Assembly (NCBI RefSeq): GCF_018977255.1
Contig: NW_024704770.1
Coordinates: 2,542,001 to 2,606,000, forward strand
DNA length: 64,000 nt
DNA from: Callorhinchus milii
Taxonomy: Eukaryota
Direction: 5' to 3'
Below, piece after piece: positions 195-12,100 of the stretch. Each line of letters starts with the position of its first letter. Position 1 is the first letter of the stretch. The notes below the pieces were generated by a model, which saw only the letters and a list, made by a program, of their open reading frames with translations, made no database searches and was not told where the DNA came from. Both the position numbers and the translations under genes were made by a program.

Positions 195-3100
195 AAATTG
201 GAGCAACTGAATCAGTATCCAGACTTCAACAATTATCTCATTTTTGTCCTAACGAGGCTAAAATCTGAAGGTATTGTTGAATGATTTACGTCTTGCTAAA
301 ACTTCGACCCCCACACACTCTTTGTGGAGTGCCTGGGGCCCAAACTCTGCCGGGAACAGTGTGAAGTCGCTCCCTACCTCTCCACGGGGGACAGTGCTGG
401 CTTACTGTCAATCATTTTCAAATCCCTTCATGCCCTCCCTATCTCTCCGACCTGCTTACACCATAACTCTCTCTCTCTCCTTTATTCTCTCTCCCTCTCC
501 CCACTCTCTCTCTCCCCCCCCACCCCCCACCTAACCCAGCATGAGCAATGATGAATGGAAATTGCAGACATTTGAATCCTGAACTAGACTCTGTGGAATT
601 CTTTCTATTCTGAGCCTTGGTTGTGCATCGTCACTGTGCAGTATCTAATTGAACCCATAATTAACAACTTGCTAGACTTACCGCAGCTCTTGTGTGATAG
701 TTTTCGAATCCCTCTGCTCGACTGGCTCCGTTCCACCATCGGCAGCCGGGCTTTCAACCCCAAAACTCTTCCTCTATCCCTTCACTTGGCCCCTCTTCCT
801 TCGTTCCCCAACTTCAGGTCGTATCTGAAGACCTTGCGATTCGACTATGCCTACGGTCACCCCTCCCCGGCTCAGCGTTGTGCTCCGCCATTATCAAGCG
901 CTCCTGCGTGAGGGGCGCTGTGTTGATGTTATCAGCAGCTTTGGTGCCTTGCGGTGCGATGACTTGTATTTCACTCCTTGCAGATGAGCCAACGAGATCC
1001 CTGAGCGGGCTGATTCTGAAGAACAACGTGAAGGCTCATTACCAGAGTTTTCCACAGGGAGTGGCTGATTTTATTAAGCAGGAATGTTTGAACAACATCG
1101 GGGATACCTCGCCCCTTATCAGAGCAACCATAGGTAAGCACCTACTGACAGCAAGGCCATGTGCACAGGTCCAGTGAACGCATGCCTTCAGTTTGGGAAA
1201 TCGATGAAGATCACTAGCGATTTATGTTTGAGAGATTGAGTGCAAGTCGCAGATTGCAGCCAATGGGATCTGGTGCTGGATTGTCGTGTGTAACCTCTGG
1301 GGCTCAGTGATCGATCGAATACTCCAGTCCTTGTTAAACTCCATTGGCTCCCTGTCACAGAGCCGATCGATTTCGAGATCCTCACTCTTGTAATTAAATC
1401 CCTTCACGCCCTGACACCCCCCCCTTCCTCTCCAACCTGCTCTCGCCCATCACTACTACCCGCTGCCTCTGCTCGATTGGCTCCGGCCTCCTCCTTTCCC
1501 CCAGACCCTCCGCCCCACCATCGGCGGACGCCCTTTCGGTCACTATTCCCCGAAGTTGTGGAACTCTCTCCCTCAGTCCCCTTTGCTTTGCCCACTCTCT
1601 ATCTCTCTCCCCATTTTTAGGCTGCGCTTGAAGACCTTCCTCCTTAACCGTGCCGCAGCATCGGGCTCCGCCGCTATTAAGCGCTCCATCCGGCGTGAAG
1701 GGCGCTGTGTAAATGCAAGTTCTTATTTGAGGCTCTGGAAATGATGGATAAATCCTTTTAATCAGTGATGATGATGATCTATATAGTATTCGTACTGACT
1801 GATCCAGAGCCTCTGTTGCTGCATTGTATTGTGGCTTGCTTAAAGATCTGGGGATATACTGGAATCCTGTAGCTCAGTGGTGAGAGCGCTCACCTCGCAA
1901 GCGAGAGAGACCTGGGTTTGATTCCCGGCAGGGCAAAACGTTGGGCAAGTTTCTTTGCTCTGTTCACCAGCTTTTCTGAGGGTAATAACCCTTTCCAAAT
2001 AAATAATAATAATTTGGTCACTCACTCAATCCACAACTGTTCTGGGACACTGCTTTGCGCAATTGGCTGCTGTGTTTCGCCCACAAAAATATACAGTCAA
2101 TTCACTTGACAGTATATCCTGTGAAGCGCTTTGAGACGTTGCAAAGACTTGATAAGGCGCTATATCAAATACAAGGATTATTATTGTAATACAGTAGGTG
2201 AAGAGTTACCGTAAAGTTTGCAAAAGGTGCTTGGAGGTTCTAGACTTTCTATATGTGTCTGCTTCGTGTAGGTATTCTCATCACTACCATCGCTTCAAAG
2301 GGCGAGCTACAAGCCTGGCCTGAGTTGCTCCCTCAGCTTTGTAACCTGCTCAACTCTGAGGATTATAACACCTGTGAGGTAGGTATGTTTGAGCACTTTG
2401 GGGTGGAGGGGGAAATAAAACAAATACTTATAGTGTCTAAATCTGAAATACAAACAGAAGTGGCTGGGAACACGCAGCAGGTCAGGCAGCGGTTCTGAAG
2501 AGATGAAAATGCGTTAACGTTTCAGGTCAATGAAATCTGACGAAAGGTCATCGATCTGAAACGTTAACTCGCTCTCCTCTGTGTCGCTCTCTTTCTCCAT
2601 AGATGCTGCTTGACCTGCTGCGTGTTCCCAGCAGCTTCTGTTTTACTTCTAGTGTCTGTACAGCTTTGCCCTCAAAATACACAGTCGATTAATTCAATTT
2701 ACGGTAACTCTGTGAAGCGTTTTGAGACGTCTGGAAGACGTGATGAGGTGCTATAATCAAATGCAAGGATTATTATTGTTTATTATGGTCGTTGCTAACT
2801 CTCTCACGCCTATGTCTGGTGCAGGGAGCATTCGGTGCCTTACAGAAAATCTGTGAGGATTCCTCCGAGATGCTGGACAGCGATGCCCTGAACAGACCAC
2901 TCAACATCATGATCCCCAAGTTCCTGCAATTCTTCAAGCATTGCAGTCCAAAGATCAGGTACCAGGCGTTTTGAGATCCAACCCTTTTGGCCACAATGAT
3001 ACGACGCGTCGCTGGGTCATGAATCTATTTCTGTCTCTGTCTCAGGTCTCATGCGATCGCCTGTGTGAACCAGTTTATCATCGGTAGGGCTCAGGCGCTG

Positions 3101-9100: not shown

Positions 9101-12100
9101 GATTATGGGGCAAGGAAGAGGTCGATTGAAACTGGAAGCGCGGCCCATGTGCAATGATGAATGGAAACTGCAGACATTTGAATCCTGAACTAGACTGTGG
9201 AAATCTTTCTATTCTGAGCCTCGGCCATGCCTCGTCACTGCCTCGGCCATGCTTCGTCAGTTTGGGGTGGAATAGTTTCATTTCAGGACAATGATAACAA
9301 TAATAAGCCTTATCGTGTTAAGACTTCTCAAAGCGCTTCACGGAACATACTGCACAGCGAATTGACCGTGTGTTTCGTGGGCGAAACCCGGCAGCCGATT
9401 GCTCACAGGGATAACCTTAAAAAATATTAATTAAAAAAAAAAACGTGGTTGTTTTCAGATGTATAACACACAGCCGGAGCAATACGAAGCTCCAGATAAA
9501 GACTTCATGATCGTGGCCCTGGACTTGCTGAGCGGGCTAGCGGAGGGGCTCGGGGGCAATGTGGAGCAGCTGGTAGCCAGGAGCAACATCATGACCCTTC
9601 TCTTTCAATGCATGCAGGTGAGTGGTAAAGGATTGCGGGGAAGCAAGACCAATATTTGATCGAGCAAAGATCACAGCCAAGTTACGAGATATGTAAATGT
9701 TGGCCAAGTTCTCTTCTATTTGTCTCTCTCTCCCCCCTTTCTCTCTCTCCCTTACCCCTTCCTTCCCCTCCCTCTTCTCTCTGCGTGCCCCCCACATATA
9801 TTATAAAGTGTAGTGACTCTAAATTTTGTGGGCGAAACGCGGCGCCCAGTTCATCCACTGTGTTGCTGTTGTACATCTGTGGCAGATTATGGGGGAAGGA
9901 AGAGGACTGTGGTATTGAAACTCGAAGCACGGCCCAAGTGCAATGATGAATAGAAACAGCAGACATTTGAATCCTGAACTAGACTGTGGAAACCTTTCTA
10001 TTCTGAGCCTTGGCCGTGCATCGTCACAATACCTTACCTTCCTCTGTGGCAGGACTTCATTGAACCCATAATTAACAACTCTCAAATCCTTTCATGCCCC
10101 CACACCCCTCTGACCTGCTCAACCCACTGCCTCCAGCCTTCTGCTTGTCCCTCGTGCCCTCCGTTCCACCGTTGGCGGCCGCGCTTTTAGCTGCCGCACC
10201 TCGAAACTCTGTCACGCTCTTCCTCTATCCCTCCGCCGTGCCCCCTTCTTCCTTCTCCATCTTCAGGTCGTGCTCGAAAGACCTTCCTGTTCGACCGTGA
10301 CTACGGTCACACTCACCCGCCCTCCCACCCCCACCGCCCAGCTCGGAGTCGTGCTCCGCCACTGTCAGGTGCTGCCCTGAGTGAGGGGGGTGCAAGTTGT
10401 TGAAAGGTTCAAGGGGAACCCACACCAGATTTTTAATGGTAGCGCTGCTCTGATATTTTCTTTATAATGTCCCGTAGGACACGATGCCTGAGGTGCGGCA
10501 GAGCTCATTTGCACTCCTCGGTGACCTAACCAAAGCCTGTTTTCAACACGTGAAGCCGTGTATAGGTAAGTGTGTCTGTGACCTCCCTTCATCTCGCCAC
10601 CTCCCCCCTTTAGTTGGGATTTTATTGGGAACTCCATCCCACAGTCCCCCCCCTTGCCTCCTTCAACACCCGTCTCAAAACCCTTCTCTTCGACCAACCG
10701 TGCCGTGCTTTCGATCAAAGCAGTATCGTGCTTTCCTCCATTCCACCAATCCTTAACTGTCCGGCGTCTTGGGACTTCCTCCTGATGTGAGAGGCGCCGT
10801 GTAAAATGTCCTTTGTTGTTGATGTATCTTCAGAAGCCTGTTCCCATTTGAAGGGGGGAGATACCGGTCTCTGGTTCCCTTGGTCACGATTCTCCCTCCC
10901 TCGCCCTCTCGCGATCGTACCTGTATCCTCTGGAAATGATGCACAAAGTGTTCTCTGAATGTGGTGATGTTTCACATATTCGTACTGTCTGATCCAAAGG
11001 CTCTCTGGTTTCCGGGTTTGCCCTCGGGAGGGTAGGCAAGTGGCTGCTTTTGGCAGGATGTAGGTGTAGGGGAATGGCTTCTTTTCTCAGCTTGTGACTG
11101 AGTTGTTTAGGTCCCTCATCAACAGAGGCCTGGTTTACTCCTGGAGCAAAGTTTTGCGAGATTGAAGGCCAGGGAAATCCCGTTGTCCCCAGAAAAGGGG
11201 ATGCGCTAAATTGATATCTAAACCTAACTGTTCGATGTTTATGTTGTGTTCGCGTAGTCCTGTAGCTCAGTGGTTAGAGCGCTCGCCTCGCAAGCGAGAG
11301 GACCTGGGTTTGATTCCCAAGCGGGTCAGGGGGAAACCTTAGCAAGTTTTCTTACTCCACACACGCCTGCGCCGACTGGAAGATGTGATATGGCGCTGTA
11401 TCAAATGCCAGGATTATTATTATTATTATCATTTAATTTCCCTTCTAAAATTCTTTACCCGAATATAGCGGAGTTCATGCCAATCTTGGGGACCAACCTG
11501 AACCCAGAGTTCATCTCTGTATGCAATAACGCCACATGGGCCATTGGGGAGATCTGTATGCAGATGGGTGAGTGTTTTCCTGATATCTGAAGTCCTGTAG
11601 CTCAATGGTTAGAGCACACACCTCGCTAGCAAGAGGACATGGGTTTGATTCCCGGGCAGAGCTAAACCTAGGGCAAGTTTCCTTACTCCACACGCACGCC
11701 TCTGTTTACCTCGCAAAAACTGGGAACATGGTTGTTAGTCGATTGGCGGATCATTTTTCCGGAGGTAATAATTCCTTCCAAAAAAAAATAATGAATCGGT
11801 CACTTCAATGCACAACTATTTATGGGACGCTGCTGTGCTCAATTGGCTGCCGCGTTTTGCCCACAAAACACACAGCCAATTCACTTTATAGCATATTCCG
11901 TGAAGCGCTTTGAGACATCTCGAAGATGTGATGATAATATTATTAGGTGCTGTATTATTACTAAGCTGACCCCAGTCGGTCAGTGATGTTGCCCCTCTGA
12001 CTCCTGCCCCCCATCTTCTTCCTCAGGTGCCGAGATGCAGCCGTACGTCTCATTGGTACTGAATAACTTGGTGGAGATAATCAACAGACCCAACACTCCC

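What the first reader, a model, noticed from the sequence alone, without database searches (positions are those of the whole stretch)
543..11000. Six-member, two-family box C/D snoRNA array in TNPO2 introns
Seen: six C/D snoRNAs, strictly one per intron, in the order B(548), 41(1741), 41(7144), B(9154), B(9943), 41(10936). Established: human TNPO2 hosts SNORD41 and, as I recall, SNORD135, each single copy. Inference: this lineage tripled both guides inside the host gene, making a nuclear-import receptor gene a high-dose source of rRNA methylation guides. The ORF track does not show any of this.
Basis: partly seen in the sequence, partly recalled or inferred. Interest (0 to 1): 0.8.

Follow-up and report, generated by a model that had tools for sequence, protein, structure and literature searches.

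The report
Six intronic snoRNAs in shark TNPO2
Six introns of a cartilaginous fish's TNPO2 gene each carry one small RNA gene of the kind that guides chemical marking of ribosomal RNA, three copies each of two types, which is a clear but ordinary example of snoRNA genes duplicating inside their host gene.

Summary
Rfam places three SNORD41 genes at 1735-1807, 7138-7209 and 10930-10997 (47.6-49.9 bits, cut-off 41). A second 66-nt box C/D unit, "B", occurs three times (C boxes at 548, 9154, 9943) and matches no Rfam family. Each of the six lies alone in its own intron of a transportin gene. Conserved neighbours FBXW9-like, DHPS and WDR83 identify that gene as TNPO2.

Human TNPO2 already hosts two U41-type genes, SNORD41 and SNORD41B/ZL2. 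Copying of snoRNAs within a host gene is a described process in vertebrates. B is not ZL2. Its invariant D' guide fits 18S C346, a site methylated in zebrafish through SNORD200 but not in human or mouse. That target assignment rests partly on a recalled 18S sequence.

The "high-dose" idea is untested. A fourth SNORD41 copy probably lies just upstream of the window.

The scan's notes list similar multi-copy snoRNA arrays in other host genes of this genome. Verdict: real, new member of a known kind, modest interest.

The parts
543..618 (+). B1 box C/D snoRNA (C box 548-554, 15-nt D' guide 564-578, D' box 579-582, D box 610-613); ends approximate
   Evidence: Box positions; invariant core; nhmmer E 3.8e-27; lies in intron 271-983.
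1729..1813 (+). SNORD41 copy a (Rfam 1735-1807) with an 11-bp terminal stem at 1729-1739/1803-1813; C box 1741-1747, D box 1799-1802
   Evidence: Rfam 49.9 bits; fold z -2.98; stem counts; lies in intron 1134-2271.
7132..7215 (+). SNORD41 copy b (Rfam 7138-7209) with the same 11-bp stem; C box 7144-7150, D box 7201-7204
   Evidence: Rfam 47.6 bits; 3 differences from copy a in 85 columns; lies in intron 6374-7545.
9149..9222 (+). B2 box C/D snoRNA (C box 9154-9160, D' box 9185-9188, D box 9214-9217); ends approximate
   Evidence: It lies in intron 8785-9458. The 3' exon was matched. The 5' exon was read only.
9938..10011 (+). B3 box C/D snoRNA (C box 9943-9949, D' box 9974-9977, D box 10003-10006), with an 8-bp external stem in the flanks
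   Evidence: fold z -2.69; lies in intron 9618-10477.
10930..10997 (+). SNORD41 copy c, the diverged paralogue; C box 10936-10942, D box 10989-10992
   Evidence: Rfam 48.9 bits; lies in intron 10566-11468.
187..11567 (+). Host gene: the TNPO2 orthologue's exons in this stretch (about 17 exons; those next to the snoRNA introns are ..-270, 984-1133, 2272-2378, 6148-6373, 7546-7717, 8677-8784, 9459-9617, 10478-10565, 11469-11567)
   Evidence: Translation; splice dinucleotides; transportin-1 matches exon by exon; IBN_N and HEAT domains; synteny.
1..65 (+). Sequence homologous to the downstream flank of SNORD41 copy b; suggests a further SNORD41 copy just upstream of the window
   Evidence: 53 of 68 aligned columns identical to 7228-7290.

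Best explanation
The first 11.6 kb of the window is the 5' two-thirds of the TNPO2 orthologue of a cartilaginous fish. Six of its introns each hold one sense-strand box C/D snoRNA gene.

Three are SNORD41 paralogues. All keep the 11-nt guide core next to box D, and they are predicted to direct 2'-O-methylation of the 28S uridine called Um4276 in human.

Three are copies of a second box C/D RNA ('B') that is absent from Rfam. Its 15-nt guide upstream of box D' is invariant and is predicted to direct methylation of 18S C346 (human numbering). Zebrafish methylate that site through SNORD200; human and mouse do not methylate it.

The RNAs would be cut out of the spliced introns by exonucleases once the core proteins bind the C/D kink-turn. 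All six lie 240-470 nt from the 3' splice site, so assembly probably relies on the long terminal or external stems rather than on closeness to the branch point.

The copies arose by duplication within the gene at different times: S41c against S41a/b is old, while S41a against S41b and B2 against B3 are younger.

Shown: the sequence features, SNORD41 membership, intron positions and host identity. Inferred: processing, both targets, expression, and that every copy works.
For: SNORD41 membership: 3 of 3 copies score above Rfam's cut-off, and all 3 keep the guide core.

SNORD41 terminal stem: 30 of 33 cells pair, against 21-48% in slid registers, with one G-C to C-G exchange in S41c.

Body versus flank: S41a and S41b differ at 3 of 85 columns, against 7 of 35 in the homologous flank (p 0.0065). 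B2 and B3 differ at 3 of 64 columns, against 15 of 96 (p 0.04).

B body: 7 of 66 columns vary, and none of these lies in the C box, the D' guide, the D' box or the D box. 16 of B's 17 weak Rfam hits are box C/D families, most of them aligned end to end.

Neither family occurs elsewhere in the 64 kb, while SINE heads occur 16 times across it.

Host and intron map.

B target register: the base opposite the fifth guide position is C. The bases 4 and 8 nt further 3' in the target are both U. This matches C346 (methylated in zebrafish), position 350 (U in non-mammals, C in mammals) and U354 (methylated).

Duplication of snoRNAs within their host gene is described for chicken and zebrafish.
Against: There is no RNA evidence.

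All three SNORD41 copies have a non-consensus last C-box base (ATGATGG, ATGATGG, ATGATGC).

All six lie far from the roughly 70-80 nt distance to the 3' splice site that I recall as optimal for mammalian box C/D snoRNAs.

The B external stems are uneven. B3 folds well (z -2.69), but B1 and B2 fold no better than shuffles (z +1.14 and +1.04). In B1 against B3 the body is no better kept than the short homologous flanks (7 of 66 against 6 of 51, p 1.0).

The covariation in the SNORD41 stem is not significant with three sequences (164 of 500 shuffles reach it).

I placed the B guide on 18S from a recalled human 18S sequence. No rRNA sequence was available to any tool. The three literature positions only check the register.

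The stretch of B just before box D pairs with the stretch just after box C, so the second 'guide' may be structural.
Confidence: 0.75

Rival explanations
1. Only one copy per family is a working gene. The others are decaying duplicates that still look intact because they are young or are homogenised by gene conversion.
For: In B1 against B3 the body is no better conserved than the flank (7 of 66 against 6 of 51). The C boxes of all SNORD41 copies miss the last consensus base. B1 and B2 lack a convincing stem. All copies lie far from the 3' splice site. There are no expression data. The scan's own notes describe amplified U31 copies in this genome as all flawed (unchecked).
Against: No copy has lost a box or a guide base: the 26-nt B core is identical in 3 of 3 copies and the SNORD41 guide core in 3 of 3. 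S41c is old enough to have diverged everywhere except the boxes, guide and stem, which is the pattern expected under selection. S41a and S41b flanks have decayed to about 80% identity while the bodies differ at 3 of 85 columns.
Confidence: 0.17
2. B is not a snoRNA. It is a fragment of an interspersed or locally duplicated intronic element that happens to carry box-like motifs.
For: No Rfam family matches it. The copies share flanks of 20-110 nt. Each sits among SINE-type repeats. Elements of the same repeat family follow both B1 and B3.
Against: It occurs only 3 times, all in TNPO2 introns and all on the sense strand, while true SINEs are spread over the whole window on both strands. It has the full C, guide, D', C'-like, 12-nt spacer and D layout at normal spacing. 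The variable columns avoid the boxes and the D' guide. Zebrafish SNORD200 likewise returned no Rfam hit according to its authors.
Confidence: 0.06
3. The repeated units are an assembly artefact, that is, collapsed or mis-joined copies of one locus.
For: The window has N runs elsewhere and one N at 6845.
Against: Each copy has its own flanks and is separated from the next by distinct, collinear transportin exons. Four probable DNA runs hold 64-75% of the sampled words of 6900-11100.
Confidence: 0.02

Closest known systems
SNORD41 (U41, Rfam RF00588), intronic in human TNPO2
   Same: Scores are above the family cut-off in 3 of 3 copies and the D-box guide core is identical to the Rfam consensus. 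The host gene is the same by synteny. Each is intronic, on the sense strand, one per intron.
   Different: There are three copies (probably four) in different introns. The last C-box base is G or C instead of A. Copies a and b have an 11-bp terminal stem against 4 pairs in the Rfam model. They lie 336-471 nt from the 3' splice site.
SNORD41B / ZL2 (Rfam RF02724), a second U41 isoform in human TNPO2
   Same: It shows that more than one U41-type guide for 28S-Um4276 in TNPO2 is also the mammalian state (snoSeeker table passage; Kishore et al. passage).
   Different: The window's copies score 21.2 and 14.3 bits on ZL2 (S41a and S41c; cut-off 50), and S41b gives no ZL2 hit at E<=10. B gives no ZL2 hit at all. 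None is a ZL2 member.
Zebrafish SNORD200, guide for SSU-Cm346 (Ramachandran et al. 2020, PMC7668251; sections and passages read)
   Same: The predicted target is the same, and that site is absent in human and mouse. Both lack an Rfam hit. B's use of a D'-side guide is the commoner arrangement in that paper's catalogue.
   Different: B is present in three copies.
Intragenic ('cis') duplication of snoRNAs in vertebrate host genes (chicken gas5-like host, PMC2653536; zebrafish FP101887 with 10 SNORDs, PMC7668251)
   Same: Paralogous copies sit in successive introns of one host gene, one per intron, with conserved boxes and guides.
   Different: Here the host is a protein-coding karyopherin gene, and two unrelated families are interleaved (B, 41, 41, B, B, 41).
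snoRNA retroposons (snoRTs; recalled, no paper read here)
   Same: Both are extra genomic copies of a snoRNA with some flank.
   Different: By eye I saw no A-rich tail or target-site duplication at the ends of the shared blocks. All copies stay inside the parent gene on the sense strand.

Membership tests
SNORD41 (RF00588) | Covariance-model score at or above Rfam's gathering cut-off (41 bits) | tested here: met
   49.9, 47.6 and 48.9 bits for the three copies, each aligned over the full model 1-70.
SNORD41 (RF00588) | D-box guide complementary to 28S around Um4276 | tested here: inconclusive
   The guide core TATTCGTACTG is identical to the Rfam consensus in 3 of 3 copies. The target name comes from the snoSeeker table. 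No 28S sequence was available for testing the pairing.
SNORD41 (RF00588) | Hosted in a TNPO2 intron | tested here: met
   Transportin exons, with FBXW9-like, G-gamma, DHPS and WDR83 downstream, match the human interval in PMC9775590. TNPO2 against TNPO1 rests on synteny only.
Box C/D snoRNA (generic), applied to B | C box RUGAUGA near the 5' end and D box CUGA near the 3' end | tested here: met
   ATGATGA and CTGA are present in 3 of 3 copies, 55-57 nt apart.
Box C/D snoRNA (generic), applied to B | Internal D' and C' boxes with guide spacers of normal length | tested here: met
   D' CTGA is invariant. A C'-like CTGTGGA follows 7-9 nt later and lies 12 nt before box D (direct reading). The C' box is degenerate.
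Box C/D snoRNA (generic), applied to B | Terminal or external stem bringing boxes C and D together | tested here: inconclusive
   B3 has an 8-bp external stem (z -2.69). B2 has a weaker one. B1 has only 4-6 alternative pairs (z +1.14). The MAFFT register of B1's 5' flank is ambiguous.
Box C/D snoRNA (generic), applied to B | Guide of 10 nt or more pairing with rRNA or snRNA, target opposite the fifth base from D or D' | not testable with these tools
   No rRNA sequence was at hand. The register fits three published positions, C346, U350 and U354, but the placement came from recall.
Box C/D snoRNA (generic), all six | Stable 65-90-nt RNA bound by fibrillarin, NOP56, NOP58 and SNU13 | not tested
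No listed run is on record as RNA.
sno_ZL2 / SNORD41B (RF02724) | Score at or above the cut-off of 50 bits | tested here: not met
   S41a scores 21.2 bits and S41c 14.3 bits. S41b is not listed at E<=10. B gives no hit.
Zebrafish SNORD200 | Sequence similarity and shared host gene | not testable with these tools
'tnpo2' does not occur in the main text.
snoRNA retroposon (snoRT) | 3' A-rich tail and target-site duplication around the copy | tested here: not met
   None was seen by direct reading at the ends of the shared blocks. This was not a formal search.

The most novel reading that the evidence does not exclude
B is the cartilaginous-fish orthologue of zebrafish SNORD200. On that reading, 18S-Cm346 and its guide, housed beside SNORD41 in TNPO2, date back to the jawed-vertebrate ancestor. 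Mammals then lost both the guide and the mark. That loss goes together with the U350-to-C change in mammalian 18S, which would put a mismatch in the middle of the guide duplex. TNPO2 would then be an ancient two-family snoRNA host whose copy number has been pruned in mammals rather than expanded in this fish.
Probability: 0.4. Interest if true: 0.45.

Novelty: new member of a known kind. Interest (0 to 1): 0.3.

Why it matters
It places the SNORD41-TNPO2 partnership at least as far back as the split between cartilaginous and bony vertebrates. It adds a clean protein-coding example to the known pattern that non-mammalian vertebrates keep several intronic copies of a snoRNA in one host gene. It also points to a second, Rfam-unlisted guide family whose predicted 18S target is methylated in fish but not in mammals. 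That gives a concrete, testable case of a guide and its rRNA mark being lost together. It does not show a new mechanism, and nothing yet supports a dosage effect.

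Tried and rejected
Rfam for B: there was no family at gathering level and nothing in 20 kb at E<=10 except sR17 at 16.9 bits. On 116 nt alone there were 17 weak hits, the best 19.0 bits against a cut-off of 45. B therefore belongs to no curated family.

SNORD135: the one paper naming it gives only a gene list. Its identity with B or with ZL2 stays open.

Makarova and Kramerov 2009 (copy number falls in placental mammals) is not held. I saw it only as a citation.

18S target: a paper search for a 14-nt stretch of the guide found 0 papers. A search for names of the C346 site found only the zebrafish paper among relevant hits. I considered scanning metagenome contigs with the guide to fetch eukaryotic 18S.

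Co-duplication of the repeat elements after B1 and B3: they are each other's best match (155 of 232), but B3's element matches another copy nearly as well (150 of 231). This is inconclusive.

Covariation in the B external stem: two G-C to A-T exchanges are visible by eye in B1, but they depend on a one-base shift of the MAFFT alignment. I do not count them.

Covariation in the SNORD41 stem: one pair, not significant.

The first flank statistics mixed in non-homologous sequence. I replaced them.

TNPO2 against TNPO1 by sequence: the PDB holds only transportin-1.

Full report
WHAT IS THERE. Rfam at gathering thresholds finds 19 matches in the 64-kb window. Three are SNORD41, at 1735-1807 (49.9 bits), 7138-7209 (47.6) and 10930-10997 (48.9), all on the + strand against a cut-off of 41. 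The other 16 are tRNA-like hits. ARAGORN reads five of the tRNA-like hits in the first 30 kb as tRNA-Ala. They are the heads of a roughly 430-bp SINE that recurs through the introns.

Three stretches align over about 85 nt, each with ATGATGA, an internal CTGA and a terminal CTGA. A 26-nt core is identical in all three, with none expected by chance. nhmmer without filters finds exactly three B and three SNORD41 units in the window; the next hits have E of 0.3 or worse.

HOST GENE AND INTRON MAP. Translating the + strand gives about 17 exons with AG/GT borders. I searched them one exon at a time against the PDB and did not join or search the spliced model.

In the numbering of human transportin-1 chain 2qmr_A:
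- 195-269 covers residues 36-60.
- 986-1132 covers 62-110.
- 2274-2378 covers 112-146.
- 6150-6371 covers 428-501 (69 of 74 identical).
- 7544-7717 covers 502-559.
- 9459-9617 covers 626-677.
- 10481-10564 covers 680-706.
- 11468-11569 covers 707-740.

The exons on either side of the introns with B1, S41a, S41b, B3 and S41c therefore abut, and each of those introns holds one snoRNA. The intron with B2 (8785-9458) is bounded upstream by an exon that I had read. Its 36 codons fill the gap between residues 588 and 625.

The PDB has no transportin-2, so I decided the paralogue by neighbours. Downstream lie an F-box gene with WD40 repeats, a G-gamma gene, DHPS and WDR83. A human 47-kb interval at 19p13.2 holds MAN2B1, WDR83, WDR83OS, DHPS, FBXW9 and TNPO2 (table passage of PMC9775590). 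The host is the TNPO2 orthologue.

A follow-up note of this scan calls the genome elephant shark (unchecked). The tRNA-Ala SINE heads fit the CmiSINE family described for that species (passages of PMC5499810).

ANATOMY OF THE SNORD41 COPIES. All three keep TGATG in box C, CTGA in box D and the guide core TATTCGTACTG next to box D. The last C-box base is G, G and C instead of the consensus A. From what I know of the kink-turn, that base lies outside the sheared G-A pairs, so I do not take it as disabling, but it is a departure.

Copies a and b have an 11-bp terminal stem and fold better than shuffles (z -2.98 and -1.66). Copy c has a shorter, interrupted stem (z +0.10). Over the three sequences, 30 of 33 stem cells pair, against 21-48% in slid registers, and one pair changes G-C to C-G in copy c. 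With three sequences this is not significant.

Copies a and b differ at 3 of 85 columns, while their alignable flank differs at 7 of 35 (p 0.0065). Copy c shares little with a and b apart from the stem, boxes and guide. So there is one old split and one younger one.

Window positions 1-65 match the flank just downstream of copy b (53 of 68). A fourth copy probably lies some tens of bases before the window starts.

ANATOMY OF B. Reading 5' to 3', the layout is:
- C box
- 24 nt ending in a 15-nt guide
- D' box
- 7-9 nt
- a C'-like CTGTGGA
- 12 nt
- D box

Seven of 66 body columns vary, and none lies in the C box, the D' guide, the D' box or the D box. The stretch just after box C pairs with the stretch just before box D in every predicted fold. 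The D-side 'guide' may therefore be a structural extension of the kink-turn stem rather than a second antisense element.

There is no stem directly next to the boxes. B3 has an 8-bp external stem (z -2.69), B2 a weaker version, and B1 only short alternatives (z +1.04 and +1.14 for B2 and B1).

B2 and B3 share about 75 nt of upstream and 21 nt of downstream flank. The body differs at 3 of 64 columns and these flanks at 15 of 96 (p 0.04). For B1 against B3 the body is no better kept than the flanks (7 of 66 against 6 of 51).

No Rfam family claims B. On the unit alone, the best of 17 weak hits is 19.0 bits against a cut-off of 45, and 16 of the 17 are box C/D families.

WHAT B PROBABLY GUIDES. 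Counting from box D', the fifth guide base is G, the ninth A and the thirteenth A. The target therefore has C at the methylated position and U four and eight bases further 3'.

From my memory of human 18S, which I do not reproduce, the guide fits the region around position 346. Three published facts agree with that register:
- Zebrafish methylate SSU-C346 (human numbering) through SNORD200.
- Zebrafish methylate SSU-U354 through SNORD90 (figure-legend passage of PMC7668251).
- 18S position 350 is U in all vertebrates examined except mammals, where it is C (table passage of PMC6984369).

The ten zebrafish-only sites, C346 presumably among them, are absent in human and mouse. SNORD200 had no Rfam hit in its authors' hands (section 12 of PMC7668251). 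B is thus a good candidate for the SNORD200 counterpart. I could not compare sequences or host genes, because these are in closed supplements, and I had no rRNA sequence for testing the pairing. An earlier first-stage note on this window also predicted an 18S target for this guide.

HOW IT MOST LIKELY WORKS. This paragraph is inference from the established biology of vertebrate intronic box C/D snoRNAs. TNPO2 pre-mRNA is spliced. The core proteins bind the C/D kink-turn, and exonucleases trim the debranched intron to the protected 70-85-nt RNA. All six units lie 241-471 nt from the 3' splice site (coordinates), with SINEs filling the space. That is far from the short distance I recall as favouring splicing-coupled assembly. 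The long terminal stems of S41a and S41b and the external stem of B3 are the kind of feature I recall as allowing assembly independent of position. None of this was tested here.

COMPARISON WITH WHAT IS KNOWN. One snoRNA per intron is the vertebrate rule. Human TNPO2 holds SNORD41 and a second U41 isoform, SNORD41B, with the same target (table passage of PMC1636440); it was later called ZL2 (passage of PMC4053766). The window's copies are SNORD41 and not ZL2 (21.2 and 14.3 bits against a cut-off of 50).

Duplication of snoRNAs within one host gene ('cis-duplication') is described for chicken (passages of PMC2653536). [quoted passage not shown] The scan's notes list other multi-copy snoRNA hosts in this same genome (U31, SNORA63 in RPL35A, SNORA20, unchecked).

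The array is therefore a new member of a known kind. Its particular points are the protein-coding karyopherin host, two interleaved families, and the possible antiquity of the B guide.

WHAT STAYED OPEN.
- Expression of any copy is unchecked.
- Both targets are untested in this species' own rRNA.
- The direction of copy-number change is unknown.
- The identity of SNORD135 is unresolved.
- The fourth SNORD41 copy lies off the window.
- It is not known whether either family occurs elsewhere in the genome.
- The supplements of PMC7668251 (SNORD200 sequence, host gene and site table) could bear directly on the B assignment, and I could not see them.

Noticed in passing
window 1-65: This stretch matches the flank just downstream of SNORD41 copy b (53 of 68 columns). 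A further SNORD41 copy probably lies in the intron just before the window starts.
   Followed up: partly
window 9218-9259: A 22-nt unit (GCCTCGGCCATGCCTCGTCACT) is tandemly duplicated immediately 3' of B2's D box: 1.9 copies, 95% matches. It duplicates the 3' arm of the external stem.
   Followed up: partly
window 1863-1936, 11257-11328, 24174-24246, 28269-28341, 29767-29838 and 11 further Rfam tRNA hits: These tRNA-Ala-like heads belong to a roughly 430-bp SINE scattered on both strands through TNPO2 introns and the neighbouring genes. They fit the CmiSINE description for elephant shark.
   Followed up: partly
window about 640-945, 1330-1725, 8790-8995, 10050-10410, 10575-10830 and others: A second interspersed repeat family, ending in a GTGAAAGGCGCT-like tail, lies next to several of the snoRNAs. 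Whether it was copied along with them is unresolved.
   Followed up: partly
window 23719-27259 (+), 31014-31262 (-), 33819-34343 (+), 39805-42599 (-): The downstream genes are an F-box/WD40 gene (FBXW9-like), a G-gamma gene ending in a CAAX-like CVLL, DHPS, and WDR83 on the opposite strand. The order is as in the human 19p13.2 interval.
   Followed up: partly
window 57222-58301 (-): A single-exon 359-aa rhodopsin-family receptor ORF (7tm_1, E 3.6e-39). I did not identify it further.
   Followed up: no
window 51400-52100 and N run 52226-52484: A GC-rich stretch (61% GC) with long glycine-, tryptophan- and proline-rich repeat ORFs on both strands lies beside an assembly gap. It is probably a simple tandem repeat.
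   Followed up: no
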